Sequence record: AP018399.1
Strand: one strand, 5' to 3'
DNA: 64,000 bases
The first letter of the stretch is position 1; each line of letters starts with the position of its first letter. A program made the position numbers and the translations under genes. Positions 3,245 to 61,659 of the stretch are shown here, in pieces. A model generated the notes under the pieces. The model did no database searches, had not been told where the DNA came from, and saw only the letters and a program-made list of their open reading frames with translations.

Positions 3245-3288
3245 TTGACATTATAATTTAGTTGCTGTAAAATGGATGGCAGGCCGGG
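3245..3288 (+). repeat. dispersed promoter-GGATGGCAGGCCGGG element, copy 1
   Basis: TTGACA-17-TAAAAT-GGATGGCAGGCCGGG. Confidence 0.9.
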
Positions 3289-3337
3289 ACTACAGCGCGC
3301 GGACAAAAAGAAAGGGAGCCAATCGGCCCCCTTCCTG

Positions 3338-3574
3338 TTACACTGCCCCGATGTACTTGGGGGCGGGTTCCATGTTGTGGAATCCCAGCTTGATGATGGT
3401 ATGCTCTTTGTACTTGATGAAGTGGAAGATGAAGAACAGGCGGAAACAGATATCGCCTTCATCATCCACATTCCACTTGAAAAGCATGTGCGGAATGTGG
3501 TAGCGATTCCACGCCCACCAGTATTGCAGTTTGATGCGGGCCTTGTACCACAGCGCGCGAATCTTCCAGCGCAT
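3338..3574 (-). CDS. hypothetical aromatic-rich protein
   Basis: ORF coupled to the upstream stop and followed by a terminator. Confidence 0.55.
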   Translation of the reverse strand: MRWKIRALWYKARIKLQYWWAWNRYHIPHMLFKWNVDDEGDICFRLFFIFHFIKYKEHTIIKLGFHNMEPAPKYIGAV

Positions 3575-3575
3575 G

Positions 3576-4250
3576 TTAGACCCCCATCGCTTCGCGGACT
3601 TCGGCGGGCAGCAGGGCGAAGCGTTCGGCGTTGATTGCATTGTAATCGTAACCGTCTTCCTTCGTGTCCATCCAATGCAGCATCCACATGAAGGGAGTTT
3701 TCGGCCACTTCTTGACGAATTCGCCGGTTTCCTTCATCCGGGTCAGCTTGTACACGAACGCTTCGCGGATATCGTAGTCGCCGACGAACGTGTAATCGCC
3801 GCGTTCGCCTTCGCAGCCACCGGAACAGCCGGACGGGTAGACGTTGTTTTGGTCGTTCGCCTTCCATGCGAAATAGACCTTGCCCATGTTCAGCGACGTG
3901 GTGCGGTAGGTTTCCATCGTCAGCAGGGCCGACAGTTCCGGATTCCAGTAGATGCGCTTTTCCTCGTCGCTCGGCTCTTCCGTATCGTCCCACGGATTGC
4001 CCTTGAACGCGACGGTTGCCAGCAGTTGGAAGCCCTGAGCCTCCACGATGGCGACAGCCTCGGCGAAGGTGATGTTGTAGTGCGTATCACGGGCAGCGCT
4101 GAGAGCATTGCGCTTGAGTTCGTTGTGACGCATGGCGAGAGCGAGGCCCAGCAGGTTGCTTTCCTCGGTCCGACGCTCGCCGGTCAGGCGTTCGGCCACG
4201 TCGATGGGGTCGAAGTCGAGGATGGTTTCCAGCGTGCTATTCTGCGGCAT
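3576..4250 (-). CDS. hypothetical phage protein
   Basis: 224-aa ORF with its own promoter. Confidence 0.8.
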   Translation of the reverse strand: MPQNSTLETILDFDPIDVAERLTGERRTEESNLLGLALAMRHNELKRNALSAARDTHYNITFAEAVAIVEAQGFQLLATVAFKGNPWDDTEEPSDEEKRIYWNPELSALLTMETYRTTSLNMGKVYFAWKANDQNNVYPSGCSGGCEGERGDYTFVGDYDIREAFVYKLTRMKETGEFVKKWPKTPFMWMLHWMDTKEDGYDYNAINAERFALLPAEVREAMGV

Positions 4251-4302
4251 TTGCCTTGTCCCGTGTGAGTGTGTGATGATTATACCGAATTAACTTGAAA
4301 TG

Positions 4303-4704
4303 TCAATCGGTCAAATCAAAATATTTCGACGTGTTGATGGTGTGCGTCTTCTTGTCGGCGTACACTGCATTGCGCAGGCCGAAATAGTAGTTGTGGAACT
4401 TCTCGTTTTGGTCGTCGCTCATGCGGTCGGTGTACTGGTTCCAATACCAGTTGACCAGCAGACAGGTGAAGGCAGCGGAGACGGTCAGGCGGTCGGCCGT
4501 CACGTCGTTGTAAGCTGCGCTCATGGTCAGTTCATCGCCATCGCACGGCAGCAGCAGGATGGTCAGGCCGTCGATGTTGGCGGTGCCCCACTGTCCACCG
4601 TTGAAGTCGCGGACCTTCTTGCGAGCCACAGCCTGAGCGTAGGCATCGAAGTGGAAGCCCTGAATCGGGTCCAGACCGAATTGCTTGATGAAGTCGATAT
4701 CCAT
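4303..4704 (-). CDS. ArdB/KlcA-like antirestriction protein
   Basis: Pattern (DFNGGQW ... AAFTCLLVN ... HNYYFGLRN) and size resemble the recalled Antirestrict family. Confidence 0.5.
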   Translation of the reverse strand: MDIDFIKQFGLDPIQGFHFDAYAQAVARKKVRDFNGGQWGTANIDGLTILLLPCDGDELTMSAAYNDVTADRLTVSAAFTCLLVNWYWNQYTDRMSDDQNEKFHNYYFGLRNAVYADKKTHTINTSKYFDLTD

Positions 4705-4756
4705 GACTGCCTCACTTCGTTGATGTGTGGTTATAATACCACACTTAAATTATATG

Positions 4757-5155
4757 TCAAGCCTCTTCGCGGAAAAGAATTCGCAGCGCGCGGGATAGCC
4801 AAAAGCCACCGACTGCGCTAGCCTTCTCCCGGTTGAACATGACTTGTCCATCCCGGAACGTCACCACGTCGTCATCCTCGCCCGTTTCGTAGGCCACGAC
4901 GTAGAAGCCTGCCCGGTCAGCCTCACGGGGAAAGCGGCAGAATGAGGCCATCATTTCAAGCGAATTCCACGCGAAGACGAATTCACGGCACCACAGGCGA
5001 TTGTTTACCGTCTGGTAATCGTGCGATGCGTGACCCTTGCGGGCCAATTCGGTGGGTTCCTCATGGGCCATGATGTTGTGCGAAATGCTCGGGCACTTGG
5101 AACGGCCGGTCAGCGGACCCAATCCATCCCTGTCTTCCAGTCGATAAACGAGCAT
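4757..5155 (-). CDS. hypothetical protein
   Basis: ORF with promoter. Confidence 0.7.
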   Translation of the reverse strand: MLVYRLEDRDGLGPLTGRSKCPSISHNIMAHEEPTELARKGHASHDYQTVNNRLWCREFVFAWNSLEMMASFCRFPREADRAGFYVVAYETGEDDDVVTFRDGQVMFNREKASAVGGFWLSRALRILFREEA

Positions 5156-5221
5156 TGCATTTCCCCGTGAGTATGTGTTAAGTATACACGAAAGAAATTG
5201 AATGTCAACAATAATTTAGAC

Positions 5222-5265
5222 TTGACAGGGTTATAATTTAGGTGTAAAATGGATGGCAGGCCGGG
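5222..5265 (+). repeat. dispersed element, copy 2
   Basis: Same consensus. Confidence 0.9.
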
Positions 5266-5347
5266 GATGTGTATCCCATGAGAAACATTGTAAACAATAA
5301 GCAACAAAAAGCCCCGACTTTCGCCGGGGCTTTTCGTGTGGTAGGGT

Positions 5348-5647
5348 TCAGGAAACCGTCTTGAGGGATTCGCGCTTGTCGATGTATCCCTTTTCGACCA
5401 GCGTATCGAACAGGGCGCAAAGGCCGTTGTTGCGATTCTTGACGGTCATGCGACCGGGGATGTTCTGGCGAACCTGACGGTCTTGGAAGATGATGGTTTC
5501 GAAGCTGCGGACCGAACCGTCTTCACGACGCTCCACCTTGCCTTCCACGGCCATCGCGTAACCCGGACGGCCATCCGGCTTGTGGGTGTAGAGATTCCAG
5601 TGGTAGCCTTCCTGCGTGGACGGAATGTACTGGCTGTCGCTGCTCAT
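5348..5647 (-). CDS. hypothetical protein
   Basis: ORF with promoter and terminator. Confidence 0.7.
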   Translation of the reverse strand: MSSDSQYIPSTQEGYHWNLYTHKPDGRPGYAMAVEGKVERREDGSVRSFETIIFQDRQVRQNIPGRMTVKNRNNGLCALFDTLVEKGYIDKRESLKTVS

Positions 5648-5694
5648 CTTGTGGCCCTTGTTGGTTGGTGTGAGTTGATTATACACCTATTGTT

Positions 5695-6039
5695 TTAATT
5701 TGCAATAGGCAATTCACCAGCCGCTTCATCCTGTCGCCACTTGGGCACCGGGACATTCTGCATTGCTTCCATGACACCACCTTCCGCACTCTTGGCTGCG
5801 GTGATAGCATCGTGATACAGACGCTTGCCGAGGAAGTGATAGCCGTTCAGGGCTTCCGGCATGTTCTTGGTGAGTTCGTTCACGGCGAACCACATGCGGG
5901 AATTGAAATTGTCTTCCGTGAATTCGGCCTTGATGCCTTCACCGATTGCGCGGAAGATGGCGTCACGTTCGGCCGCATGGAAATGGCTCATGTGGTTGCG
6001 GATGTAGCGAGCGACCCACCAGCGAATCAGACGACGCAT
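5695..6039 (-). CDS. hypothetical protein
   Basis: ORF coupled to the upstream gene. Confidence 0.65.
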   Translation of the reverse strand: MRRLIRWWVARYIRNHMSHFHAAERDAIFRAIGEGIKAEFTEDNFNSRMWFAVNELTKNMPEALNGYHFLGKRLYHDAITAAKSAEGGVMEAMQNVPVPKWRQDEAAGELPIAN

Positions 6040-6040
6040 G

Positions 6041-6244
6041 TTAGCGGCCCTTGAATGAGTTGTGTTCGGCGACGATGGTTTCCGCCAGTGCCAGCCCGTA
6101 GACGGTTGCCACAACGTCCGCTTCCGTGTCACCGTTGGGCGTGCCGTTGTCGATGCGAATCGTCCAGTTGCCATGTGCATCGGGACATTCGTCCACAATC
6201 CACTTCTTCTTGATGCGGTTGAGTTCGCTGTCGAGCTTGTTCAT
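6041..6244 (-). CDS. hypothetical protein
   Basis: ORF with promoter. Confidence 0.6.
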   Translation of the reverse strand: MNKLDSELNRIKKKWIVDECPDAHGNWTIRIDNGTPNGDTEADVVATVYGLALAETIVAEHNSFKGR

Positions 6245-6295
6245 GGTGGCGATTCCGTTGAGTGTGTAATAATTATACACACTCAAATGAAATTG

Positions 6296-6514
6296 TCAAC
6301 CCTTCTTTTTATTTTCGTCTCGGGCTTGACGGAAGCCGCGCAGCTTGTCAAGCTTGCGCCACACGTCCCGCTGCACCAGCTTGTATTCTGGGGCGTTCAG
6401 GGCGTCGAGGCGCTGGCTCAGGTCTTCGTAGTAGCTCAGCAGTAGATTGAGGTTCGCATCACTCAATGCGTCCCCATTGTCCAGCGCTTCGTTAGCCGCT
6501 CGCAGTTTGTTCAT
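6296..6514 (-). CDS. hypothetical helical protein
   Basis: ORF. Confidence 0.6.
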   Translation of the reverse strand: MNKLRAANEALDNGDALSDANLNLLLSYYEDLSQRLDALNAPEYKLVQRDVWRKLDKLRGFRQARDENKKKG

Positions 6515-6715
6515 GCGATGCGGCCTTCATAGGGATTGCCCGCCTTCCACGATTCCGGCGAACAGGTATCGGAATGGCGGGACGTGTGGTTGGTCCAGTA
6601 GACCTTGCCATCTTCCACCTTGACCAGCGTGTACGTCGAGCCACGCCACTTGACTTCGTTCGGGAGATTTTCGCTCACGGCCTTGCCTCTTTGATGATGT
6701 GTTTATTATAACACG

Positions 6716-7009
6716 TCAAAAGTATTTGTCAATATCCTGTTGCATCTTGACAATGCCAACGGGATTGGCAGAATGGACACGGACCACAGCCGGAACGGTC
6801 GCACCTTCCAGCTTGCGCATGATGATGTATTGCAGCACGTCCCAGCCCGTCATTTCCTTGTTTCCGTAGAATGACGCGATATCGTGGTCTAGCGAAACTT
6901 CATCGTATTCGCCAGAGTCGAGCATGACGATGGCTTGATGAAAGTTGCGGGCCACGTCCCAGCCTTCGGGGCATGGCCGCAAATCATCCACGTACAGCCT
7001 GCGGCTCAT
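6716..7009 (-). CDS. cyclic-phosphate-processing receiver (REC)-like domain protein
   Basis: LYVDDLR ... VSLDHDI ... TGWDVL ... VHSANPVG motifs. Confidence 0.7.
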   Translation of the reverse strand: MSRRLYVDDLRPCPEGWDVARNFHQAIVMLDSGEYDEVSLDHDIASFYGNKEMTGWDVLQYIIMRKLEGATVPAVVRVHSANPVGIVKMQQDIDKYF

Positions 7010-7203
7010 TCGACTTTGCCCGTGCCGTGGCAGTAGGTGCAACGCTCTTCGTAGTTTTCCACTTTGGTAGACGGGAAATAACCCATCCCCAGCGCGGCAC
7101 CCATGATGACGCCCATCGCCATATCCGGGACAACACGGGTTTGCGTGCGGGTGCCCTTGCCGTAGCAGAAACTACAATTGCGCTTCTCTTTCTTGTCGCT
7201 CAT
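7006..7203 (-). CDS. DnaJ-type zinc-finger small protein
   Basis: CSFCYGKG and CTYCHGTG repeats. Confidence 0.65.
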   Translation of the reverse strand: MSDKKEKRNCSFCYGKGTRTQTRVVPDMAMGVIMGAALGMGYFPSTKVENYEERCTYCHGTGKVE

Positions 7204-7529
7204 TACAGCTTTTCCTTGAGTTGACGCATGATTTCCAGCGAATCATTGCGGTACAGCTTCATCGTGTGGTGAATGTCTTCCACGTCCAGCACGATGTAAA
7301 ATGAATCATCGTTGTGGTCTTCATCCCAATCAGCCACAGCGAAGTTTTCACGCGGGAAGATGATGATTGAATCATTGTCTTCACCGACGTAGAAAATGAT
7401 TTGGTCGGTTGCGTCGGAATAGCCAACGCTCTCCACCAGCGTTGCACCGTTGACGATGATGGTCACGGAAGCGAGTAGCAGGGCAATCGCTCGGCCGGAT
7501 TCGATGGGGTTTGCAGGCTGGAAAGGCAT
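7203..7529 (-). CDS. hypothetical protein
   Basis: ORF with AAGGA SD. Confidence 0.7.
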   Translation of the reverse strand: MPFQPANPIESGRAIALLLASVTIIVNGATLVESVGYSDATDQIIFYVGEDNDSIIIFPRENFAVADWDEDHNDDSFYIVLDVEDIHHTMKLYRNDSLEIMRQLKEKL

Positions 7530-7559
7530 TGTATGTTCCTTAGTTGAGAAAGGCCGGGA

Positions 7560-7673: not shown

Positions 7674-7732
7674 AGCACTAGCTCCGTAGTTGATGTGTGC
7701 TAGTATACTTATAATTTTCCCGGTGTCAAGCG

Positions 7733-11224: not shown

Positions 11225-11324
11225 GTGTGTAGCATACCACTATAATTTACAATGTCAACACTTATTTTCTAGCTTTTTGCACTATGGACATTTCGCAAAT
11301 AGCCGATTTTTCGTCGCGTGGTTC

Positions 11325-11368
11325 CCCGGCCTCCCAGCCATTTTATTATAATTAAGTTCTCTTGTCAA
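11325..11368 (-). repeat. dispersed element, copy 3 (GGCTGGGAGGCCGGG variant)
   Basis: Same consensus, minus strand. Confidence 0.85.
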
Positions 11369-11435
11369 CTATTGCAGACAAAGAAAAGCCCGGATATGCT
11401 CCGGGCTTTCCGCATTCCCCGTTGTGGGGGTTGGG

Positions 11436-12814: not shown

Positions 12815-12858
12815 TTGACGTGACCTAAATTATAGTGTAAAATGGATGGCAGGCCGGG
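12815..12858 (+). repeat. dispersed element, copy 4
   Basis: TTGACG-17-TAAAAT plus motif. Confidence 0.9.
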
Positions 12859-12916
12859 ACAGTATGCGGGGCCAACAAAAAGCCCGGATTGCTCCGGGCT
12901 TTCGATTCTGCTAGGG

Positions 12917-13479: not shown

Positions 13480-13523
13480 TTGCGCAAAAGAAAATTATAG
13501 TGTAAAATGGATGGCAGGCCGGG
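13480..13523 (+). repeat. dispersed element, copy 5
   Basis: TTGCGC-17-TAAAAT plus motif. Confidence 0.9.
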
Positions 13524-13574
13524 AGAGTATGCGGGGCCAAAGAAAAGGAGCCTTGCGGCCCCTTCGCTTTTTAG

Positions 13575-14992: not shown

Positions 14993-15035
14993 TTGACAAA
15001 AGAAAATTATAGTGTAAAATGGATGGCAGGCCGGG
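14993..15035 (+). repeat. dispersed element, copy 6
   Basis: TTGACA-16-TAAAAT plus motif. Confidence 0.9.
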
Positions 15036-15171
15036 ACTATAGCCCGGACAGAATGAAACCCCAGCCTTGCGACCGGGGTTTCGGAAAGGATTCGCCGTCT
15101 GTCCAGTTATTTCGCTGGCGGGTTCAACCTGTAGACATAATGCCACAGGTTGTTATACTTGTCAAGCGATT

Positions 15172-16511: not shown

Positions 16512-16902
16512 TGTCTGTTTCCTGTTTGTGTGTGCCCATTATACACACTTAAATTATTAGTGCAACCCCTTTTACCAATCTTTTTCATTGATGATAATGG
16601 GACGGCTGTCGGAAAACTCCGGAAGGCGGGACAGGCTGATTTTCAGCGTTTCATGGTCCACGCTACCGGCTTCCCATGTGACCACGCGGGGCTGATTCGC
16701 CCAACCCATGTAACGGGATTCGCGGATGCGCTTTGCGCCAAGCTGGCGCAGCATGGATTTGTACATTTCCGCGTCATACGGGAATGCATCGAATTGGGAA
16801 GACTGGTGCAGGTATTCACGCATGACGGTATTCCCTTGGGGTGTGTGACCATTATACACAAACAAATGAGGGTGTCAACTACAAATTTCAATCTTTTTAG
16901 GC

Positions 16903-16945
16903 TTGACATTCCTATAATTTAGTGTAAAATGGATGGCAGGCCGGG
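16903..16945 (+). repeat. dispersed element, copy 7
   Basis: TTGACA-16-TAAAAT plus motif. Confidence 0.9.
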
Positions 16946-16987
16946 GATATAGCGAGGCAAAAAGAAAGGGGCCGTAGCCCCTTTCCC

Positions 16988-17254: not shown

Positions 17255-17360
17255 CGGTGTGTCTCCGTGGTTGATGTGTGTACTATACTCCCTTAAATTT
17301 ATTTGTCAACACCTTTTTTCAAATATTTTTAGGGGTTGACAGGATTCGGTGGGCTAGTCT

Positions 17361-17403
17361 CCCGGCCTGCCATCCATTTTACACTTATAATTTAGAAAGT
17401 CAA
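17361..17403 (-). repeat. dispersed element, copy 8
   Basis: TTGACT-16-TAAAAT plus motif. Confidence 0.9.
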
Positions 17404-18335
17404 GTATTGCAGACAAAGAAAAGCCCGGATATGCTCCGGGCTTTCCTGTTTACATTGCTCGGCGGCTGATTGCATCGCCGGTGAAGGCTTCCCACACGTC
17501 ATACGGCATGGAAAGGCGGATAACCCCTTCACCATCGAAAACGTGTACCTGTCCGTCATCGTCCATTTCGGCGATGAATTCGTCAGCTTGGGCGAGGATG
17601 GTCACCCCATCGGACCGACTGCAATCGCATTCGGCCATCGGGTGTATACGGCGAGAACAGCCGTCGTCGCAGGCACGGTCAGGGCGTTCGGGCATTGGCA
17701 TTCTCCATTAGGTTCGGGTCCACGTCATGTACTGGCGTTCGGTGATTTCGCCATTCTTGTGGAGGGAATCGGTCCAGTCATTGAACGCGGTGTCCAGCGT
17801 CGCACGACCTTGGTCCGGGAGCTTCGGGGCGATTTCGTCTTTGAAGAACTTGCGGGCTTCACGAAGGGTCATGGCGGCGTTCCGTTGTGGTATGGGTGCC
17901 ATTATACTCAATTAAATTGAGTTGTCAACACCTAGTTTTTGTTCGGTGGGAAGGTATAATGCCGCTTTGACACAGGCGAACCGCAATGCTTGCAGCGCCC
18001 GTGCATGATGTAGTAGCGTTCGGTTAGTTGATTCGTGAAACGGTTTGTGCTTTCCCAGCCGTCACCCTGTACCCAGCGGTCAACCTCATGCACGTCGCTT
18101 TTGCAACGCATGGTGATGGCCTCGACCTTGGCCCGTGCGATGGTCACTTCACGTTGCGTTTCCGCTTCGATTGCCTTCGCATTGGCCTCGGCGGCTTTCG
18201 TCTGAGCCGCTAGGATTTGGATATCTTGACGGCGTGCGATGTAGCAATGCACGATGGTCCAGAGAGGGCCGAAAATGCCCTTGAATTGACGTGTGGCGCT
18301 CACATGGGTGAACACCACGTCGATTGGTTCCTGAC

Positions 18336-22457: not shown

Positions 22458-22501
22458 CCCGGCCTCCCAGCCATTTTACACTATAATTTAGAAGCTGTCA
22501 A
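22458..22501 (-). repeat. dispersed element, copy 9 (GGCTGGGAGGCCGGG variant)
   Basis: TTGACA-17-TAAAAT plus motif. Confidence 0.85.
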
Positions 22502-28636: not shown

Positions 28637-29275
28637 ATGAACCTCATTCCTGCCACTGTCACCGTTCCGGACTTCATCCTCAACAACGACCTGTTCCTGC
28701 GTGCGGCGAACTTCGCCCACAAGCACCATGATGCGGTCGGACAGAAGCGGGAAGGCTCTGGCGAACCCTACATCGTCCATCCGCTGGAAGTGGCCGGTCT
28801 GGCTCACGCGATGGGCCATGAGTTCGACTATCCGAGCGAATGGATTGAAGTGGCTGTCGTCGCGGCGCTGCTGCACGACACCATCGAAGACACCAAATGC
28901 ACCTACAACGAAATCGAAGCTGAGTTCGGGGCTGTCGTTCGCGACACCGTGTTCTGGCTGACGGACGTGGTGGAGAAGGCCAAGGGCAATCGCCGGGTGC
29001 GCAAGGAACTGGAACGTGTGCGTCTCATGGCTGCACCGGGCCGGGTCAAGTTCATCAAGTGCTGCGATATCATCGCCAATGCCCGCTGCATCCTCAAGGA
29101 CAAGCCGGGTTCGGCTCAGTTGTTCCTCACCGAGAAGATGAGCGTGCTGGATACGTTCGTCCACTACAACCGGATGCACAAGGGCACCGATAACATCGGC
29201 AAGTTGGATAAACAAATGCTTGCCAAGTGCCGTGCGGTTCTGGTAGAATTCATGGACACTATCAGCAAGCCCTAA
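28637..29275 (+). CDS. HD-domain (p)ppGpp hydrolase-like protein (small alarmone hydrolase)
   Basis: H..GQKREGSGEPYIVHP ... ALLHDTIEDT, the RelA/SpoT HD signature. Confidence 0.8.
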   Translation: MNLIPATVTVPDFILNNDLFLRAANFAHKHHDAVGQKREGSGEPYIVHPLEVAGLAHAMGHEFDYPSEWIEVAVVAALLHDTIEDTKCTYNEIEAEFGAVVRDTVFWLTDVVEKAKGNRRVRKELERVRLMAAPGRVKFIKCCDIIANARCILKDKPGSAQLFLTEKMSVLDTFVHYNRMHKGTDNIGKLDKQMLAKCRAVLVEFMDTISKP

Positions 29276-30281: not shown

Positions 30282-30390
30282 GGGAATGTAGCTCAGAGGA
30301 CAGAGCGCAGGGCGAGGAAGGGACTGGTTTTCCACCAGTAAACCCATCCAATCTCAGAAGTCAGTGGTTCGAATCCATTCATTCCCACCA
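30282..30390 (+). ncRNA. tRNA-like RNA with extended anticodon arm (109 nt)
   Basis: Acceptor GGGAATG/CATTCCC-ACCA, normal D and T arms, ~33 extra nt. Confidence 0.75.
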
Positions 30391-36046: not shown

Positions 36047-36122
36047 GGCCCGTTAGCTCAGCGGTCAGAGCAAGAGCCTCTAAAACTCCGGGTCGTGGGT
36101 TCGAATCCCACACGGGCCACCA
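36047..36122 (+). tRNA. amber-reading tRNA (CUA), A73
   Basis: 76-nt cloverleaf, loop CT-CTA-AA, CCA. Confidence 0.85.
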
Positions 36123-36129: not shown

Positions 36130-36205
36130 GCTTTCGTAGCTCAGCGGTCAGAGCAAGAGCCTCTAAAACTCCGGGTCGTGGGTTCGAATCCCACCGAAAG
36201 CGCCA
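36130..36205 (+). tRNA. amber-reading tRNA (CUA), G73
   Basis: Same D/AC/T arms as the previous tRNA but a different acceptor stem. Confidence 0.85.
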
Positions 36206-37066: not shown

Positions 37067-37213
37067 ATTCTGATGGCGAAATAGGTAGACGCGGGGGTCT
37101 AGGCCAATATGGAGAAGGGAGCTAAACATTCCCTCTGCTGCTCATGGTCGGAAACTGCTGTGAAAGCGTTGCAGCAAAACGCTGACCGTGTGGGTTCGAC
37201 TCCCACTCAGAAA
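37067..37213 (+). ncRNA. tRNA-like RNA (Leu-like body) with extended anticodon arm
   Basis: Leu-type D loop GGCGAAATAGGTAGACGC, V arm and T arm; ~60 extra nt. Confidence 0.65.
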
Positions 37214-37224
37214 TTACTATATAA

Positions 37225-37620
37225 CAGTATGGTCGTAATCCCTTTAAAATGAAGGGCGTTCGGACGCGGGTTCGATTCCCGCCACGTCCACCACATGCAT
37301 CTTATAGCCAGAACTGAATCTGGTAAGAGGTAGTCAGCCACATTGAACCTTTCAGTAGAGCGCTGACCTAAGTCGCATGTAGTAACCCGCTTTAGGGTGC
37401 AAGTGATGGGCGTGCCAAGGTTTCGACGGGCGAAGATAGTGGAGAAGGCGACTAGCCAGAGTAGGCTCTAAAACTAAAACCTAAAGTAACTGCCAACGCA
37501 AATACTTTCGATTACGCACTAGCTGCCTAATCCCAAGCACATCCAGCACTTGGTCACCGAACGCTGGGCAATAGCAGTCCTTGGACTGTCTATTGTGAAA
37601 CATCTTCTGGTTCAGCCAGC
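37225..37620 (+). ncRNA. ssrA: circularly permuted (two-piece) tmRNA; tag ANANTFDYALAA
   Basis: Acceptor piece ending CACGTCCACCA (37293) precedes the 5' GGGCGTG (37408); G3.U70; tag 37492-37530; outer ends approximate. Confidence 0.85.
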
Positions 37621-37637
37621 CTAGGCAAAAGACGCAT

Positions 37638-38214: not shown

Positions 38215-38995
38215 ATCTCAAGGTGGAATAGCGTACAGTGATGTGCGTAAAGTGTGGCCCGCTCAGGCTGCGCACCATGCAAATGGCTCCATCAAACAAG
38301 CACCGACTCCGGGGCACGCCAAAAGTGTGTCACGGCCCTTGTGAAGAACCACGAGGGAACTTGGAAAAGGTGCCCGACAAGCTAGTCTTGGGACAACTGA
38401 GACAGTTTCCACCCGCAAAGTGGATTAGGGATGCAACACGGATACCAAGCACTAGTCAAGGTGTAGAACATAAGCATGAGGCTGCAACCAAGTGCGATGT
38501 TCAGTGAAGTGGGACTGTTTAACAGGCAGAACCGCATATACAATCCGAGTAGCCGCAAGCGAAAGGATACAGGGGCGTGTTGTATTTGGTACTTCAAAAG
38601 GGTATCGAGCAACGGCAACACACGTCCTGAGCAACAAAACAACTTCATAGGTTAATGAAATTAATTAAACGCAAAGTTGTTGCCGGTGCATGATGAAAGT
38701 GACGTAATGCTTGACACGCAAGTGAATCAAGCCATTCCGAGGCTCGCAAGGCAGAGGGGTGTTGTGGGAAAGTCGCACGTTTGGGGTCGAACCCTTTACT
38801 GCTCGCAAGGCAGGCGGTAGACAGAACCATGAATAGTCATGCACGACAGTGGAAATGCCACCACTTTAATCTAGGCCGTCATGGTTGCTACTCACATGAG
38901 TGAGTGGATAACGGTAGAAACTTCGCTCGCAAGCGGAGTATAATGACCGGAAAGGTAACCAATCAATGCTGTAATCTCAGGCAGGCTTTTCCAAT
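38215..38995 (+). ncRNA. giant ornate ncRNA, GOLLD-like (~780 nt)
   Basis: No credible ORF, many GNRA hairpins, tRNA context, GGCGTGTTGTA..CAAAAGG and GTAATCTCAG motifs recalled from GOLLD. Confidence 0.6.
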
Positions 38996-39263: not shown

Positions 39264-39342
39264 CGCGCGGTACAATCAATATCGGCAGATGGGCACCCTC
39301 ATAAGGTGTCGGTTGGGAGTTCAAGTCTCCCCTGCGCTACCA
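39264..39342 (+). tRNA. tRNA(CAU), initiator-like C1 mismatch
   Basis: C1.U72; lacks the three anticodon-stem G-C pairs. Confidence 0.75.
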
Positions 39343-54767: not shown

Positions 54768-54811
54768 CCCGGCCTGCCATCCATTTTACACTATAAATTA
54801 TAAAGTGTCAA
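54768..54811 (-). repeat. dispersed element, copy 10
   Basis: TTGACA-17-TAAAAT plus motif, directly upstream of a CDS. Confidence 0.9.
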
Positions 54812-56775: not shown

Positions 56776-58083
56776 TCACTCGGAAGCCGCAGATTCCAAG
56801 TCAACCACGTCCTTGTCCAGCAGCGCAGTTTCGTGCGCGAGGAACAGCGGAGACTTCGCCTTCGTGATGGTCGGCGACACCGCTTCGCACTCCACGATAC
56901 GCAGGCATACGCCTTCGTCCACGGTCTTTGCGTCGCTCAGCGGAACCGGCATATCGGTGAAAGCCGAATGGCCGCTCATCACGTCGTCGTAGTAGCGACG
57001 GTCCATCAGGGCTTCGATACGGCCAGAAGCTACCAAGTCCGCCTTACGACCACGGAAGAATTCCGGGGTGTGCATGATGCCGTTGTCCACACAGAAGCGC
57101 TTCACCGCATCCCACGACAGTTCCACATGACGGCCGTCGTTGGTGATGACCATGATACGATAGACGTACAGGTCAGCACGGCCCTGCGGCACGTTGTAGG
57201 TGTAACCCGACTGGATAGCCGCACCGTCGCCGGTCCAGCCAATCAGTTCCGCGTACAGGATGAAGTTCTGCGGCACGATGGCATCGTACTTCTTGCCTTC
57301 GGTAGACCAGATATCGTCCTTGTAGAAGTGGACCTGATTCGGGTTGTTCGCATCCTTGATGACGCGACGCGAACCGTACACATGGTCATACGCCGTGGTC
57401 TGCACCTTGACGCCGAAGAACTTGGCAACCTTTTCCTTCCACGTCGGCTGCACGTTCACCGGCACATGGCCGATACGGATAGACGTACCGTGGAGCTTCT
57501 GGGTCACGATGACTTCGGCATCATCCGGAATCGAATCCAACTGGCGGAACCAGTGGGAAGTCGCCAGATGTTCCGGCAGGAACTTGTTGTCGATACGCTT
57601 GAACTTCTCTTCCTTGAAGGAAGTCTTCTGCACACCGGCCTTGCGAGCCACTTCGTACTTGCGGCAGATTTCGATGCCCGCGATTTCATCGAAGGTATCG
57701 CCTTCCTTGAGCTTCGACACGTCGATGCCCGTGAAGGCCAGCGAATCCACCGGCATCACCAGCGCATCCGAACGATGACCACGGAACTTGATTGCACGCA
57801 CGCGACGGTTCGCTTCGATGTAACCCTTCTTTTCCGGGTCAGCATTCAGCGTGGTATCGCGGTACAGGTTGTTCGCCTTGGTGTATTCGTCGGACAACTG
57901 CGTCTCTGCCGTGAACACCAGCACGAGGTCGCCGACCTTCGTATCCTTGCCCACGATGGCCTGATAGCCGAACAGCGGAGCGCCAACCACGTTATCGCAG
58001 TTCGGCAGCACGTTGATGTGGCGAATCGTCGTGACCACAGCCACGTAGTTCGCGTTCTTCGGTTCCTTGAAAGTCAGAGACAT
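56776..58083 (-). CDS. ATP-dependent RNA ligase with N-terminal OB-like domain (DRB0094-like)
   Basis: Motif I TQKLHGT, motif IV DEGVC and motif V KAKS. Confidence 0.8.
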   Translation of the reverse strand: MSLTFKEPKNANYVAVVTTIRHINVLPNCDNVVGAPLFGYQAIVGKDTKVGDLVLVFTAETQLSDEYTKANNLYRDTTLNADPEKKGYIEANRRVRAIKFRGHRSDALVMPVDSLAFTGIDVSKLKEGDTFDEIAGIEICRKYEVARKAGVQKTSFKEEKFKRIDNKFLPEHLATSHWFRQLDSIPDDAEVIVTQKLHGTSIRIGHVPVNVQPTWKEKVAKFFGVKVQTTAYDHVYGSRRVIKDANNPNQVHFYKDDIWSTEGKKYDAIVPQNFILYAELIGWTGDGAAIQSGYTYNVPQGRADLYVYRIMVITNDGRHVELSWDAVKRFCVDNGIMHTPEFFRGRKADLVASGRIEALMDRRYYDDVMSGHSAFTDMPVPLSDAKTVDEGVCLRIVECEAVSPTITKAKSPLFLAHETALLDKDVVDLESAASE

Positions 58084-58196
58084 TGTTGTCGCCTTGTTGA
58101 TTGAATGTAGGAGTAAACTATAAACCAAAAAAGAAGCCGTGTCAACACTTGACACGGCCTCTTCATCAATGTTGTAACTAGTGTTTTATTTTTGTA

Positions 58197-59198
58197 TTAC
58201 TTGACGTGCGTGTAGGTTTCGCCGTCGCGGATGCGAGCCACCGAGCGGGCAGACGTGCCGTAGGTCTTCGCGATGGTGGACAGCGGCCAGCCTTCGCTCA
58301 ACGCCTGACGGATATCGCGAACCTGCTGGTCGGTCAGCGTGGTGGTACCAACCGCAGTCTGCTTGGAAGCGAGGCCGGAGGTCGGGGCCAGCGGAGCCGA
58401 CTTCACATCAGCGGCCAGCGGAGCCGGAGCAGCCGGGGTCGCCTTCGTGTCGAACTTGGTGTCGAAGTTCGCCACCAGCTTTTCGATTTCGCTGCGGTCT
58501 TCGTTGTACTTCAATTCGCCGACGACGAGGTAGCGGCAGGCACGGCCCTTCGCGTTGTTGTAGTCGGTCGGAATCGAAACCACGTCTGCCGGGTTAATCT
58601 TCACCACGACGATGCGGGCACCGCCGAAGTGCGACAGGTACGATTCAGAGCAGAAGTGCAGGCCGGTCGAGCAGGTTTCGTCCTTGTTGTCGTTGACAGC
58701 GTTGCGCGGCATTTCCACGACGAGGCCGATGTTGTTCTTGGTCTTGCCATCGTGAACCGAAGTGTAGTCCGCGTTGACCTTCTTGTACGCGAGGAAATGG
58801 CCGTCCGTGGTAATCGGCAGGTCGCACGCTTCCATGAAGCCGTACAGTTCGGTGATGGCGCGATGCGACGGGTTCTGCATCAGGTTGTCGAGGAACAGCA
58901 GCAGCGGGGCAGCGTTGCCAGCTTCCTTCACGACCGTGAGGATGCGGCTCACCAGAGCGCCGTGCAGCGGACGACCATCGTACTTGAGAACGGTACCGTC
59001 CAGTTCAATCTTGCCCTGCGACAGCTTGACCACGGCCTGACGGACTTCGACAGCATCCTTCACGCCCTGAACGTCACCGGCTTCGATTGCCTTGATAACG
59101 AGGTCATACTGCGGAGTGCCGGTGGGGACGATATGCTGTTCGCCATCGACGTAGACGGTGACGTTCTTGCTGGAAATGACGTGCGGGATGAATGACAT
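58197..59198 (-). CDS. rIIB: rIIB-like protein
   Basis: DGHFLAYKKV, CSTGLHFCS and KGRACRY; adjacent to rIIA. Confidence 0.9.
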   Translation of the reverse strand: MSFIPHVISSKNVTVYVDGEQHIVPTGTPQYDLVIKAIEAGDVQGVKDAVEVRQAVVKLSQGKIELDGTVLKYDGRPLHGALVSRILTVVKEAGNAAPLLLFLDNLMQNPSHRAITELYGFMEACDLPITTDGHFLAYKKVNADYTSVHDGKTKNNIGLVVEMPRNAVNDNKDETCSTGLHFCSESYLSHFGGARIVVVKINPADVVSIPTDYNNAKGRACRYLVVGELKYNEDRSEIEKLVANFDTKFDTKATPAAPAPLAADVKSAPLAPTSGLASKQTAVGTTTLTDQQVRDIRQALSEGWPLSTIAKTYGTSARSVARIRDGETYTHVK

Positions 59199-59263
59199 TG
59201 AGAGAATTCCTTTAAGGTTTGAACTTGGTAGGTCTATATAGTAGCACTATTTGAGGCAGAGCG

Positions 59264-61471
59264 TCAAGCGCAGTTGTGGCACATATTGATGTATTCCACA
59301 ACATGCTCCGCTTCCTTGCCCGTGATAGCGCCGTAGCCGTGACGGGCCGCGTACTGCATCATGGGAGCCTTGTCGAACACAGTCTTGGTCGCGTTGCGGG
59401 TTGCAGCCAGAGCCGGATGCTGGTCAGCGTTGTAGCCAGCGATACGCAGCATGTAACCGTTCACGTCCGCCTTCGAAGCCACGGCCTGAGCCTTCGCATT
59501 CAGACGCATGAGACGGGCCAGCTTCGAACGCGGGTGCAAGCCCTGCAATTCGGAGAAGCGATATCCCAGAGCCGAATGAATCAGTTCGTGGATGCTGTTG
59601 GCGATAGTATAACGCTTAATCTTCGGATTAGCAATGATTTCCGCACGCTTTTCCTTAACGTAATCTTCCAACTTCACCCACTCAATGCCCGTCTCGGCCA
59701 GCTTGTCAACGTCATTGGCACGGATGCCATAGAGCGGCAAGTCAACCACGCCAGCATTGCAGAGTTCGTTAAACTGGCCCTTCACGTTGTAACCGATGCT
59801 TTCGGTACGCTGGCGGTCCACAACAATGTAGACGGCCTTTTCAACGTCGTCGCCGTTGTCGTCGGTCAGTTCGCCCAGCTTGTCGTATTCGCGCTTCCAG
59901 TTCGCAACCGAATCCATATCATCGCGGCCATTGCCGTTCGCACGGTAAGCGGTCGGACGGCTGTAGTCGGTACGGGTGCGGTCATACGCAGTACGCGGCG
60001 GGTCGGCCATCTGGGAAACCATGTGAATTTCCGCGAAGCCGCCCAAGTGGTCACTCAGCGCCTTGATGAAAGCCGCATCCATCTTGATGCTATCGAAGTT
60101 CGCAGTCAGAGACAGCATCGTTTCAAGGTTCTTTTCCTTGAAAAAATGACGCATCTTCGCAACCGGAGTCTTCGAAGTATCGCGCAGGACGATAGCAACG
60201 CGCTCACCCTTGGTAGGCTGCAACGTGGCATCATCGCTGGAATTGCGAGAGCCGGTGAAGCCGTTCATGCCGTTACGGGTGTACTTGGTAATCGACACGC
60301 CGTTGACGGTCTTCTTTACCTTGTTGCCATTGATATCTTCGCGTTCCACTTCCGTCTTGAACGCATCGCAGGTACCCAACTGGAAAGAGTAGGTGCCGTG
60401 GTGATGCTTGGTCGCCGGGGACAAATCCATTTTGATTCCCGCGATGATGCTGCGGAAAGTCTGATTGTCATTGATGAAGCGTGCCTTTTCATACACGTTC
60501 GGCAGCGTGGCAATCTGGGTTTCAATCCACTTCACCACGTCAGCGTGAGCTTCGGCCACACGCTTCTTAAGTGAATCCAGCGTCACGCCCTTGTACTCGA
60601 CACCTTCACGGCTGGCGGTCACGCCAATCTCGCCGATGTTGAAATACAGGTTCGCACCGATTTCATTGATGGTACGGAGGAACTGGCCGTCTTCCGACGA
60701 CAGGTGCGGCAGCACTTGCGTCACGTCCAGCGGATAGCCGACCGGACCCTGAATGATGTGCATCGACGCACGACCATAGGCTTTCGAACGGAAAATCTTG
60801 ATGGTCGCAGTTTCGAACAGCGCTTCGCCTTCCTCTTCGAAGTCGAACTTCGCACCGTTGCGGAAGTTCACGACTTCCGGCTTCACCGGGAAGAAACGCA
60901 ACTGAGTTTGCGCAGCCTTGATGAAAGCGCCAAAATCCTTCGGTTCGACACCGATTTTGATTTCGACACCGTTGTGTTCGTCGCTGGCGGTTTCAGCCAT
61001 AAGCTGAATTTCCGGGATGCCCTCGCCATTGATGAAGGCCGAGTACATATACTTGCGACCGTTGTAAATCGAAGTAACATTGAACTGGTCGGTGTACGAG
61101 AACGGAGTCTTCGCACCGAGGCCGAATGCGCCCACGGCATCATTCGACTGGTCCTTGGTGGACTGGAAGTAGACGCAGAATACGGTCTGCACGGCATCCG
61201 GCGACAGGCCGATACCGTAATCGCGGAAGGAAACCCACGGCTCAAATGCGTCCGGCAGGTGCAGGGTGAACGCCTTTTCCGGCGTACCGGCCATGACGTG
61301 CGAGTCCAAGCAATTGCACGAGATTTCGCGCATGATGGAACCAATCTTGTCCTGATACATGGTATCGGAAAGGACGCGGAACGCCTTACCGTTCATGGCG
61401 ATGGAGAACTGGCCGGACTGACCGGCAGCGCCAGAGGACTTGACCGGACCGTTATGCTGCTGAATCTGCAT
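59264..61471 (-). CDS. rIIA: rIIA-like protein (GHKL/HSP90-like N-terminus)
   Basis: REISCNCLDSH, RDYGIGLS, STK and GAFGLGAK. Confidence 0.9.
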   Translation of the reverse strand: MQIQQHNGPVKSSGAAGQSGQFSIAMNGKAFRVLSDTMYQDKIGSIMREISCNCLDSHVMAGTPEKAFTLHLPDAFEPWVSFRDYGIGLSPDAVQTVFCVYFQSTKDQSNDAVGAFGLGAKTPFSYTDQFNVTSIYNGRKYMYSAFINGEGIPEIQLMAETASDEHNGVEIKIGVEPKDFGAFIKAAQTQLRFFPVKPEVVNFRNGAKFDFEEEGEALFETATIKIFRSKAYGRASMHIIQGPVGYPLDVTQVLPHLSSEDGQFLRTINEIGANLYFNIGEIGVTASREGVEYKGVTLDSLKKRVAEAHADVVKWIETQIATLPNVYEKARFINDNQTFRSIIAGIKMDLSPATKHHHGTYSFQLGTCDAFKTEVEREDINGNKVKKTVNGVSITKYTRNGMNGFTGSRNSSDDATLQPTKGERVAIVLRDTSKTPVAKMRHFFKEKNLETMLSLTANFDSIKMDAAFIKALSDHLGGFAEIHMVSQMADPPRTAYDRTRTDYSRPTAYRANGNGRDDMDSVANWKREYDKLGELTDDNGDDVEKAVYIVVDRQRTESIGYNVKGQFNELCNAGVVDLPLYGIRANDVDKLAETGIEWVKLEDYVKEKRAEIIANPKIKRYTIANSIHELIHSALGYRFSELQGLHPRSKLARLMRLNAKAQAVASKADVNGYMLRIAGYNADQHPALAATRNATKTVFDKAPMMQYAARHGYGAITGKEAEHVVEYINMCHNCA

Positions 61472-61615
61472 GTGAAGAGTATCCTTGATGAAGTAAGTGC
61501 GAGAATTATAGGCCGACAAAATTACAATGTCAACCCTCATTCTGGAATTCGTTGGCGGCGATGTGCGTCAACTGATGGCGACAAGTATAAGGATTAAAAT
61601 CAATCCGTCAAGGGG

Positions 61616-61659
61616 TTGACAGGCAATAAATTATAGGGTAAAATGGATGGTAGGCCGGG
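61616..61659 (+). repeat. dispersed element, copy 11 (GGATGGTAGGCCGGG)
   Basis: TTGACA-17-TAAAAT plus motif. Confidence 0.9.

What the first reader, a model, noticed from the sequence alone, without database searches (positions are those of the whole stretch)
3245..61659. Eleven-copy element: sigma70-like promoter driving a conserved G-rich 15-mer, then a variable hairpin
Seen: 11 copies of TTGACA-like-N16/17-TAAAAT-GG(A/C)TGG(C/G/T)AGGCCGGG (3245, 5222, 11325, 12815, 13480, 14993, 16903, 17361, 22458, 54768, 61616). Seven point against the local gene direction, several back-to-back with an early promoter, and run into the neighbour's terminator, which would give ~50-100-nt non-coding transcripts. 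Three point at another promoter and one leads a CDS. The 15-20 nt after the motif vary but often pair back with it (CCGGG/CCCGG at 15031, GGCCG/CGGCC in copy 9, GGCCGG/CTGGCC at 61653, GGGAT/ATCCC at 5264). Inference, three options: (a) a family of small RNAs with a constant 5' handle and variable cargo, (b) R-loop-forming G-rich transcripts priming replication or recombination, like T4 ori transcripts, or (c) a phage regulator binding site. The closest known analogue is the promoter/stem-loop (PeSL) cassettes of RB49-like phages, but those do not explain the conserved transcribed 15-mer.
Basis: partly seen in the sequence, partly recalled or inferred. Interest (0 to 1): 0.85.

Follow-up and report, generated by a model that had tools for sequence, protein, structure and literature searches.

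The report
Conserved non-coding early phage promoter family
The eleven repeats are copies of one special host-type promoter of the jumbo Xanthomonas phage XacN1, mostly aimed backwards at the neighbouring gene's terminator to make ~50-nt non-coding RNAs. The promoter is kept almost letter-perfect in related phages, but the purpose of these RNAs is not known.

Summary
The window is nt 1-64000 of Xanthomonas jumbo phage XacN1, inside its 66-kb terminal repeat. It holds 11 copies of TTGACA-N16/17-TAAAAT-GG(A/C)TGG(C/G/T)AGGCCGGG, against 0 expected by chance. A 12th copy lies at 65502, outside the window.

The element ("B type") recurs in Xoo-sp13, Stenotrophomonas phage RAS14 and many metagenome contigs, giving 58 unique copies. 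Its core is 94-100% identical between XacN1 and Xoo-sp13, while the orthologous genes compared are 66-72% identical.

The 15-mer straddles the predicted start site. GGATGGC is the untranscribed discriminator, the invariant A is +1, and the RNA begins AGGCCGGG.

In XacN1 1-22.4 kb every strong antisense-strand promoter is B type (5/5, versus 2/34 on the gene strand). Ordinary "A-type" early promoters instead carry a CA-rich leader with a ribosome-binding site.

All 7 antisense copies run into the neighbour's bidirectional terminator, whose hairpin ends at +49 to +54 (one at +76). Sense copies sit behind a terminator and, in three of four, upstream of an A promoter.

The "variable hairpin" is barely above shuffled controls. 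R-loop, G-quadruplex and toxin-antitoxin readings are disfavoured.

Best reading: an RNA-polymerase-optimised, possibly escape-limited sigma70 promoter dedicated to short cis-antisense or insulating transcription. Its biological role is unproven.

A near-identical core occurs in PBSX-like Bacillales prophages.

The parts
3245..3288 (+). B-type promoter copy 1 (-35 TTGACA, 17-nt spacer, TAAAAT, GGATGGCAGGCCGGG). Predicted TSS A3281. Antisense to ORF011.
3309..3336 (.). Bidirectional terminator hairpin of ORF011, reached by the copy-1 transcript (hairpin +32 to +53).
3214..3241 (-). A-type early promoter (TTGACG-16-TATAAT) back-to-back with copy 1 (3 bp between -35 elements). Drives ORF010.
5222..5265 (+). 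B copy 2. Predicted TSS A5258. Antisense to ORF015. Hairpin at +51 to +76 (5304-5337).
5181..5208 (-). A-type partner promoter of copy 2 (13 bp between -35 elements).
11325..11368 (-). B copy 3 (variant GGCTGGGAGGCCGGG), sense orientation. It directly follows terminator 11383-11411 and lies upstream of the A-type promoter 11231-11258 of ORF033.
12815..12858 (+). B copy 4. Predicted TSS A12851. Antisense to ORF039. Hairpin at about 12878-12903.
13480..13523 (+). B copy 5 (weak -35, TTGCGC). Predicted TSS A13516. Antisense to ORF040. Hairpin at about 13545-13564.
14993..15035 (+). B copy 6. Predicted TSS A15028. Antisense to ORF043. Hairpin at about 15056-15081.
16903..16945 (+). B copy 7. Predicted TSS A16938. 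Antisense to ORF047. Hairpin at 16963-16986. A-type partner promoter at 16851-16878 (24 bp between -35 elements).
17361..17403 (-). B copy 8, sense orientation. It follows the same terminator sequence as copy 3 and lies upstream of the A-type promoter 17282-17309 of ORF047.
22458..22501 (-). B copy 9 (variant GGCTGGGAGGCCGGG) at the divergence point. In tandem with a TTGACA-17-TATAGT promoter ahead of ORF063. A candidate TTGCAA-type promoter facing ORF064 lies back-to-back with it (seen by eye only).
54768..54811 (-). B copy 10, the only copy that directly leads a CDS (ORF117, start 54754). It follows the ORF118 terminator. The same arrangement is present in Xoo-sp13.
61616..61659 (+). B copy 11 (variant GGATGGTAGGCCGGG). 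Predicted TSS A61652. Antisense to ORF124. Hairpin at about 61680-61705. Back-to-back (4 bp) with the promoter of rIIA. The same position and orientation are kept in Xoo-sp13.

Best explanation
The repeats are one class ('B type') of host sigma70-dependent early promoter of XacN1-like jumbo phages, specialised for non-coding transcription.

Promoter anatomy. From -35 to about +3 the conserved sequence is what RNA polymerase itself reads:
- a TTGACA -35 element;
- an AT-rich 16/17-nt spacer ending in TG;
- TAAAAT as the -10 element;
- a purine-rich GG(A/G)-type discriminator;
- a pyrimidine at -1, the invariant A at +1 and G at +2.

The RNA therefore starts AGGCCGGG (AGGACGGG in Xoo-sp13). The invariant C+5/G+6 step, combined with near-consensus promoter contacts, is inferred to make escape slow or paused. 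The promoter would then be heavily occupied.

Placement. The element sits between the terminator of one early gene and the ordinary (A-type) promoter of the next.
- In the commoner orientation it fires back into the neighbour's bidirectional terminator. This gives an RNA whose terminator hairpin ends about 50-55 nt from the start and which is complementary to the neighbour's 3' end.
- In the other orientation it acts as an upstream tandem promoter.

Inferred function. It gives cis control of neighbouring early cassettes. Convergent transcription and an occupied polymerase would block read-through (insulation). The antisense RNA could affect the neighbour's mRNA 3' end, as lambda OOP RNA does.

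Shown versus inferred. Shown: the sequence anatomy, its conservation, the orientation bias and the terminator geometry. Inferred: the start site, the pausing, the existence of the RNAs and the biological effect.
For: The repeat is real and the window is XacN1 1-64000, inside the 65,875-bp terminal repeat.

Conservation. The core is 94-100% identical between XacN1 and Xoo-sp13, where the orthologous genes compared are 66-72% identical. Fifty-eight unique copies exist in relatives, including Stenotrophomonas phage RAS14. In the 51-copy logo the positions G1, G2, G5, G6, A8, G9, G10, C12, G13 and G14 are invariant, and conservation spans -25 to +14.

Promoter-class separation. Among promoter-like sites in XacN1 1-22.4 kb, 5 of 5 on the antisense strand are B type, against 2 of 34 on the gene strand (hypergeometric p about 4e-5). 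The same bias holds in Xoo-sp13. In RAS14 a loose motif scan found two B-like copies, both on the antisense strand. A-type promoters carry a CA-rich leader with a ribosome-binding site, so the two classes differ exactly in the transcribed start.

Terminator geometry. All 7 antisense window copies, and 4 of 6 in Xoo-sp13, have a GC hairpin ending at +49 to +54 or +76. No sense copy has a genuine terminator-like hairpin.

Placement. Orthologous placement and orientation are kept in Xoo-sp13 for the copy upstream of rIIA and for the leader of the ORF117 homologue. Where a partner promoter was detected, the gaps between back-to-back -35 elements cluster at 3-4, 13-14 and 23-24 bp.

Literature. PMC5730371 reports that a GGG discriminator places the start 7 bp after the -10, with pyrimidine at -1, purine at +1 and G at +2 preferred. 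PMC5961368 reports that (T/C)G steps at +5/+6 slow escape through initial pausing. PMC10914365 documents phage antisense RNAs with defined start sites.

Independent lineage. PBSX-like Bacillales prophages carry TAAAAT-GGRAGGC-AGG-N-CGG at a sigmaA-type promoter. This fits the view that the core is addressed to the polymerase, the obvious machine these hosts share.
Against: - There are no transcript data. The start site and pausing are extrapolated from E. coli rules to Xanthomonas polymerase.
- Conservation of +4 to +8 and of A+12/T+13/A+14 is not explained by known polymerase contacts.
- On the B strand the U-tracts after the hairpins are short (0-5 T in 8 nt). Termination may be leaky, so long antisense transcripts are possible.
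- Only about 7 of roughly 35 intergenic spacers carry the element, so it is not a general insulator.
- A function that works in both orientations is hard to reconcile with a single RNA-based mechanism.
- The copies are related by descent and perhaps by gene conversion, so the counts are not independent.
- The cross-phylum match was found with a pattern that fixed about 17 of 21 positions in very large databases, where chance hits are expected.
Confidence: 0.5

Rival explanations
1. A family of trans-acting small RNAs. The constant 5' end AGGCCGGG would be a seed, or a protein-binding handle, and the 15-20 variable nucleotides would give specificity. The terminator hairpin serves as the 3' module.
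For: The predicted unit has a nearly constant size, with the hairpin ending at +49 to +54. The 5' end is invariant. An A-rich linker plus a terminator resembles Hfq-type sRNA architecture.
Against: - No enrichment of the complementary CCCGGCCT outside the motif itself in the window.
- The A-rich linker and the hairpin are simply the reverse of the neighbour's terminator.
- Sense-oriented copies make a quite different RNA.
- Variable segments are not conserved at orthologous positions: upstream of rIIA, XacN1 has GGTATACACTGGCCC and Xoo-sp13 has AGCATAGGATGCTTC.
- No Rfam family matches.
Confidence: 0.15
2. The downstream conserved block (-7 to +14) is the operator of a phage or host DNA-binding regulator that switches this promoter class on or off.
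For: Conservation extends beyond known polymerase contacts, to +8 and to ATA at +12 to +14. It is far above the gene background. The class is sharply distinct from A-type promoters.
Against: The block has no dyad symmetry. No candidate regulator was identified. The same core appears in Bacillales prophages that share no detectable regulator with XacN1 in the regions held.
Confidence: 0.15
3. A poised late-switch promoter of the lambda PR'/Q kind. Polymerase waits at the start until a phage antiterminator loads, then reads through the terminator. From the plus-strand copies it would run antisense across the early block towards the rightward tRNA and middle genes.
For: The layout is a strong promoter followed by a terminator about 50 nt downstream. 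In PBSX-like prophages the same core overlaps or closely follows the stop codon of a sigma-region-4-like regulator gene, and in the one locus read in full (L114) it precedes a terminator ahead of xpf and the terminase genes. The plus-strand copies point towards the rightward gene block that starts at 22.5 kb.
Against: - A sigma-dependent pause element needs a -10-like hexamer with its final T. The T equivalent at +16 is present in only 5 of 51 copies.
- No Q-like or homologous regulator was found in the held XacN1, Xoo-sp13 or RAS14 regions.
- Up to about 19 kb of antisense transcription would be costly.
Confidence: 0.1
4. A G-rich non-template strand forms a G-quadruplex or R-loop that primes replication or recombination in the terminal repeat.
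For: The sequence fits GG-NN-GG-NN-GG-NN-GG. All eight tract Gs are invariant, while five other positions vary. If variation fell at random, the chance of it missing all eight is about 0.007.
Against: - Only two tetrads are possible, with a predicted energy of -1.36 kcal/mol.
- The predicted start site splits the tracts, so the RNA cannot contain them.
- G-richness ends at +8 and an A-rich tract follows.
- A8 and C12 are also invariant, which a quadruplex does not need.
- The G positions are equally explained by discriminator, +2 and YG contacts.
Confidence: 0.05

Closest known systems
Lambda OOP RNA and other phage cis-antisense RNAs (for example the PAK_P3 and phiKZ antisense RNAs mapped by ONT-cappable-seq, PMC10914365)
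   Same: A host-type promoter lies convergent to a phage gene. It makes a short terminated non-coding RNA complementary to the neighbour's 3' end.
   Different: Here there are many copies per genome (12 per terminal repeat) sharing one near-identical promoter and start sequence. The overlap is largely limited to the shared terminator. Some copies are in sense orientation. No RNase III or expression data exist. The details of OOP are recalled from my own knowledge, not from a tool.
PeSL (promoter-early stem-loop) cassettes of T4-type phages
   Same: Repeated early-promoter-plus-hairpin modules lie between small early ORFs in a plastic region. Identical copies occur at several sites, for example the terminator-plus-B block at both 11345 and 17381.
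   Different: PeSL promoters point at the ORFs they serve. Most B copies point away from coding sequence, and the hairpin belongs to the neighbour. B has a conserved discriminator and start that PeSL is not known for. This comparison rests on my own knowledge.
Strong coliphage early promoters with conserved transcribed starts (T5 N25 family) and lambda PR (GATAAT-GGTTGC-A)
   Same: A consensus-like -35 and -10, a GG right after the -10, and sequence information downstream of +1 that affects escape (Kammerer et al., cited in PMC5961368).
   Different: The B start is GC-rich and invariant across phage genera. The class is used for antisense rather than coding transcription.
Lambda PR'-6S RNA-tR' module with the Q antiterminator
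   Same: A constitutive strong promoter gives a short terminated transcript. In the Bacillales relatives it lies just after a regulator gene and ahead of late genes.
   Different: No -10-like pause element with a conserved final T is present, and no Q-like gene was found.
Type I toxin-antitoxin pairs with 3'-overlapping antisense RNA (txpA/RatA, bsrG/SR4)
   Same: Convergent transcription with a shared bidirectional terminator.
   Different: The convergent genes here are not small hydrophobic peptides. The maximum 19-residue hydropathy is 1.25 or less.

Membership tests
sigma70/sigmaA-type promoter | -35 TTGACA-like and -10 TAnnnT hexamers 16-18 bp apart | tested here: met
   Ten of 11 copies score at least 10 of 12 in the consensus scan or by eye. 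Spacing is 16 or 17 nt.
sigma70/sigmaA-type promoter | Experimentally mapped start site and dependence on host holoenzyme | not testable with these tools
   The start is predicted only, at the invariant A 8 nt after TAAAAT, from the rules in PMC5730371.
Phage cis-antisense RNA (OOP-like) | Promoter convergent with a gene, and a short transcript ended by an intrinsic terminator | tested here: met
   Seven of 7 antisense window copies have a GC hairpin ending at +49 to +54 or +76. Orientation was checked against the annotation.
Phage cis-antisense RNA (OOP-like) | Antisense RNA lowers or processes the target mRNA | not testable with these tools
   No transcriptome or genetic data exist for XacN1. 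The genome paper does not mention promoters.
PeSL cassettes of T4-type phages | Early promoter plus stem-loop oriented towards, and flanking, the small ORF it serves | tested here: not met
   Seven of 11 copies point against the genes. The hairpin is the neighbour's terminator.
Known RNA family (Rfam 15) | Match at gathering score at the copies | tested here: not met
   The window scan found tRNAs, tmRNA and GOLLD only, with nothing at any B copy. Nothing was found at the Bacillales copies either.
G-quadruplex element | Four G-tracts able to form stable tetrads in the strand that is single-stranded or transcribed | tested here: inconclusive
   Four GG tracts are invariant. Only two tiers are possible (-1.36 kcal/mol with RNA parameters), and the predicted start splits them.
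R-loop origin transcripts (T4 oriF/oriG, ColE1 RNA II type) | Extended G-rich transcript, or an unwinding element downstream that holds a persistent hybrid | tested here: not met
   G-richness ends at +8. Positions +23 to +33 are A-rich and are followed by a terminator hairpin.
Lambda PR'/Q-type antitermination promoter | A -10-like sigma-dependent pause element in the early transcribed region, with its A and final T | tested here: not met
   A+12, T+13 and A+14 are conserved, but T at the final position (+16) is present in only 5 of 51 copies.
Lambda PR'/Q-type antitermination promoter | An antiterminator gene in the phage | tested here: inconclusive
   No relative of the Bacillales sigma-region-4 proteins was found in the XacN1, Xoo-sp13 or RAS14 regions held. 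The rest of the genomes was not searched.
Type I toxin-antitoxin (3'-overlap class) | The convergent gene encodes a small hydrophobic toxin | tested here: not met
   ORF011, 015, 039, 040, 043, 047 and 124 are hydrophilic, with no transmembrane-like segment.

The most novel reading that the evidence does not exclude
The 16-21-nt core TAAAAT-GG(R)(W)GG(C)-A+1GG-N-C+5G+6G may be a factor-independent 'polymerase-poising' module. Near-optimal -10, discriminator and +2 contacts would combine with an early YG pause. It would be used in phages and prophages of both Proteobacteria (XacN1-like jumbo phages) and Firmicutes (PBSX-like elements).

In XacN1-like phages it would be placed, in either orientation, between a terminator and the next promoter. 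There it would act as an occupied barrier or antisense switch. A timed signal could release it to flip transcription across the early block. Candidates for that signal are a phage factor, or the alarmone made by the phage's own RelA/SpoT-like enzyme ORF077.
Probability: 0.15. Interest if true: 0.75.

Novelty: new variant of a known kind. Interest (0 to 1): 0.55.

Why it matters
Early regions of jumbo phages are mostly unannotated, and nothing is known of how XacN1-like phages schedule transcription. The XacN1 genome paper does not mention promoters.

This element splits the early promoters into two sharply different classes: a coding class with a translation leader, and a non-coding class that is mostly antisense. 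That gives a concrete, testable handle on early-gene control, on insulation of tightly packed promoter-gene-terminator cassettes, and on phage antisense RNAs.

The extreme conservation of the discriminator and start offers a natural test case for how sequence downstream of the -10 sets open-complex stability, start-site choice and escape. So does its recurrence in Bacillales prophages.

The element is also a practical annotation marker for this phage group in metagenomes.

Tried and rejected
- 5' hairpin as a defining feature: folding +1 to +30 of 57 copies against 200 shuffles each gave a mean z of only -0.39. Many copies have no hairpin.
- Type I toxin-antitoxin reading: the convergent ORFs are not hydrophobic.
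- Constant 5' end as a seed with repeated targets: CCCGGCCT is not enriched outside the motif.
- Host mimicry: the pattern hit no Xanthomonadaceae genome among one representative per species.
- Known RNA family: no Rfam match.
- Shared regulator with the Bacillales prophages: tblastn of the 153-aa and 227-aa sigma-like proteins against the held XacN1, Xoo-sp13 and RAS14 DNA found nothing.
- Published description: full-text search for the 15-mer and its complement found no paper.
- Relatives of the Bacillales locus among isolated phages: none.
- Mini-ORF starting at the ATG in TAAAATGG: TA at +13/+14 would make a stop codon in only about half the copies, and the ATG lies upstream of the predicted start.
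- Not done: I did not fetch the 250-kb unique part of XacN1. BLAST reports 22 places in the record, consistent with copies only in the two terminal repeats, but this is not proof.

Full report
**Identity of the window.** The first 24 kb match Xanthomonas phage XacN1 (AP018399.1) positions 1-24000 at 100% identity. XacN1 is a 384,670-bp jumbo myovirus whose ends are 65,875-bp direct terminal repeats (PMC5852040). The whole window therefore lies in the left repeat. The genome paper does not mention promoters or terminators. A full-text search for the 15-mer found no paper.

**The observation.** TAAAATGGMTGGNAGGCCGGG occurs 11 times with no mismatch; none is expected by chance. The aligned copies show a longer unit:
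- a TTGACA-like -35 element;
- a 16/17-nt AT-rich spacer, either (C)TAAATTATAGTG or its partial inverse TATAATTTAGTG;
- TAAAAT;
- the 15-mer.

Genes from 1 to 22.4 kb and from 53.9 to 65.4 kb are on the minus strand. So seven copies (3268, 5245, 12838, 13503, 15015, 16925, 61639) are antisense. Three (11345, 17381, 22478) are followed by a second promoter before the gene. One (54788) leads ORF117 directly. A 12th copy lies at 65502-, just beyond the window at the inner end of the repeat. BLAST reports 22 places in the XacN1 record, consistent with copies confined to the two repeats.

**Conservation.** Megablast of the 24-kb early region against 50,697 phage records hit only XacN1 itself and, in Xoo-sp13, essentially nothing but the motif.
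- Xoo-sp13 is syntenic (rIIA, rIIB, M23 peptidase, tRNA-His guanylyltransferase). It has at least 11 copies, mostly GGATGGCAGGACGGG.
- The orthologous genes compared are 66-72% identical at nucleotide level, whereas the B core is 94-100% identical.
- Pattern scans added Stenotrophomonas jumbo phages RAS14 and CM1 and many soil, rhizosphere and freshwater contigs, several with 2-5 copies. In all there are 58 unique copies.
- The 51-sequence logo shows a conserved block from about -25 to +14, counting the invariant A of the 15-mer as +1.
- Within the 15-mer, G1, G2, G5, G6, A8, G9, G10, C12, G13 and G14 never vary. Positions 3, 4, 7, 11 and 15 do.

**What the 15-mer is.** PMC5730371 gives the rules for start-site choice. 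A GGG discriminator places the start 7 bp after the -10. A pyrimidine is preferred at -1, a purine at +1 and a G at +2. In the B element the seventh base is C/T/G, the eighth is the invariant A and the ninth is an invariant G. The first seven bases (GGATGGC) are therefore the untranscribed discriminator, and the RNA should begin AGGCCGGG.

The invariant C+5/G+6 is the kind of (T/C)G step that PMC5961368 associates with initial-transcription pausing and slow escape. Together with near-consensus contacts, this suggests a heavily occupied, escape-limited promoter. That is an inference. Conservation of +4 to +8, of R+9 and of A+12/T+13/A+14 is not explained by known contacts.

**Two promoter classes.** In 1-20 kb there are 60 promoter-like sites against 15 expected, most of them TTGACA-16-TATAAT on the gene strand.
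- With a stricter pattern, 5 of 5 antisense-strand sites in 1-22.4 kb are B type, against 2 of 34 on the gene strand. The hypergeometric probability is about 4e-5.
- Xoo-sp13 shows 5 of 9 against 0 of 34.
- In RAS14 a loose motif scan found two B-like copies, both on the antisense strand.
- The ordinary A-type promoters are followed by a CA-rich leader and a ribosome-binding site. This is clearest in RAS14, where the leader is ACACACATCAACCACGGAG-N-ATG.

The two classes therefore differ exactly where coding and non-coding transcripts would differ.

**Geometry.**
- Every antisense copy in the window, and 4 of 6 in Xoo-sp13, is followed by a GC-rich hairpin ending at +49 to +54 (one at +76). No sense copy has a terminator-like hairpin; the single script hit, at copy 22478, is weak and lies over the ORF063 start region.
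- The hairpin is the neighbour's terminator, with the A-run on the B strand and a strong T-run on the gene strand. On the B strand only 0-5 T follow it, so termination may be partial.
- Two sense copies (11345, 17381), and relatives in six contigs, share an identical upstream terminator, GCCCGGAGCATATCCGGGC.
- Apart from the copies at divergence points, the element lies between one gene's terminator and the next gene's A promoter, in either orientation.
- Where a divergent partner promoter was detected, the gap between the two -35 hexamers is 3-4 bp (10 cases), 13-14 bp (10 cases) or 23-24 bp (4 cases). These steps of about one helical turn come with two outliers (11 and 56 bp) and the caveat that many copies are orthologous.

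**The hairpin claim.** Folding +1 to +30 of 57 copies against 200 shuffles of each variable part gives a mean z of -0.39. Many copies are essentially unstructured. A 5' hairpin is not a defining feature in this phage group.

**Rival readings.**
- R-loop or G-quadruplex. The GG-NN periodicity is real and the variable positions avoid the G tracts. But only a two-tier quadruplex is possible (-1.36 kcal/mol), the start site splits it, and an A-rich stretch follows +8.
- Trans-acting sRNA family. No repeated complement to the constant 5' end exists in the window. The variable part is not conserved at orthologous sites. The linker and hairpin are by-products of the neighbour's terminator.
- Regulator operator. 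This is not excluded, but the block has no dyad symmetry and there is no candidate protein.
- PR'/Q-like. The promoter-then-terminator layout fits. However, the -10-like element lacks its final T (5 of 51 at +16), and no antiterminator was found in the DNA held.
- Type I toxin-antitoxin. The convergent ORFs are hydrophilic.

**An unexpected relative.** The pattern TAAAATGGNNGGNAGGMCGGG also hit about 45 Bacillales prophage contigs of roughly 40 kb, with one copy each.
- Fetching 77 loci through the neighbouring protein showed the natural variation there: TAAAAT-GG(A/G)AGG(C/G)-AGG-(A/T/AT)-CGG.
- The core is followed by a 5'-proximal hairpin whose two arms differ together between subfamilies, for example GGGGAGG...UUCCCGC against GGCGCGG...CCUGCGUC.
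- The promoter overlaps or closely follows the stop codon of a 153-aa sigma-region-4-like protein. It lies about 560 nt upstream of a 'positive control sigma-like factor' (NF005385, the Xpf type) and the terminase genes. These are therefore PBSX-like elements.
- The pattern fixed about 17 of 21 positions, and chance hits are expected in databases of this size (for example tRNA 3' ends in Kiritimatiellia). Yet the unfixed positions (A3, A/T4, C7, and the GTG before TAAAAT) also agree.
- The simplest reading is convergence on what bacterial RNA polymerase prefers from -13 to +7. This supports the view that most of the '15-mer' is addressed to the polymerase. Common descent or a shared factor cannot be excluded.

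**Verdict.** The repeat is real, strongly selected and previously undescribed. It is best understood as a distinct, polymerase-optimised sigma70 promoter class used for non-coding transcription, mostly cis-antisense, between early gene cassettes of XacN1-like jumbo phages. What the transcription achieves is not settled: insulation, antisense control, or a switch are all possible. Phage antisense RNAs with defined start sites are a known kind (PMC10914365). The novelty lies in three things: the multi-copy, near-invariant promoter and start; its strict association with non-coding orientation; and its recurrence across phyla.

Noticed in passing
window 38570-38983 (+): A full-length GOLLD RNA (Rfam RF02032, 227 bits against a gathering score of 150). 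It lies in a stretch with no annotated feature in AP018399.1 (36561-39052), next to the tRNA clusters.
   Followed up: no
window 37177-37621 (+): A phage-encoded permuted (two-piece type) tmRNA. ARAGORN predicts the tag ANANTFDYALAA, and Rfam tmRNA_permuted scores 123 bits. It is not annotated in the record, and the genome paper does not mention tmRNA.
   Followed up: partly
window 36047-36122 and 36130-36205 (+); also 30282-30387 and 39265-39337: Two tandem amber-suppressor (CUA) tRNAs, already noted by the genome paper. Rfam also finds two extra tRNA-like hits that ARAGORN did not list: a 106-nt hit at 30282 that may be a tRNA with an insert, and a weak one at 39265.
   Followed up: no
XacN1 65482-65525 (L002; outside the window): A 12th copy of the element (variant GGGAGGCAGGCCGGG), on the minus strand at the inner end of the terminal repeat. 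It is followed by a second promoter. Xoo-sp13 has the equivalent copy at its divergence point (L005 20027+).
   Followed up: partly
L007-L051, L107-L131, L133-L209 (Bacillales prophage contigs): PBSX-like prophages carry TAAAAT-GGRAGGC-AGG-N-CGG at a sigmaA-type promoter. It overlaps or closely follows the stop codon of a 153-aa sigma-region-4 protein and lies upstream of an xpf-like sigma gene and the terminase genes. The RNA start there forms a hairpin whose arms change together between subfamilies.
   Followed up: partly
L114 about 1697-1860: Downstream of the Bacillus promoter and a strong terminator lies a sequence with a class-II-tRNA-like D-arm (GGCGGAATAGGTAGACGC) and a T-arm and acceptor end (GGTGCAAATCCTTGCCCGCAT). 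They are separated by an insert of about 110 nt. ARAGORN and Rfam do not call it.
   Followed up: partly
window, upstream of copies at 3245, 5222, 16903, 61616; relatives: The -35 hexamers of the B element and its divergent partner form an inverted repeat (for example GTCAAGGGGTTGAC). Gaps cluster at 3-4, 13-14 and 23-24 bp, about one helical turn apart.
   Followed up: partly
window, spacers of all copies (for example 12821-12837 versus 16909-16924): The spacer motif occurs in both orientations (TAAATTATAG or CTATAATTTA). A perfect TATAAT therefore lies in the spacer on one strand or the other, without a matching -35. A-type promoters have a similar AT-rich spacer ending in GTG.
   Followed up: no
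window 11383-11411 and about 17419-17447 (-): The same terminator plus B-promoter block, about 90 bp and nearly identical, occurs twice in the window. It recurs in six metagenome contigs, which suggests it moves or is homogenised as a cassette.
   Followed up: no
window 28637-29275 (ORF077): The terminal repeat encodes a RelA/SpoT-like 'GTP pyrophosphokinase'. A phage-made alarmone could affect the two promoter classes differently, because they differ in the discriminator. This is pure speculation.
   Followed up: no
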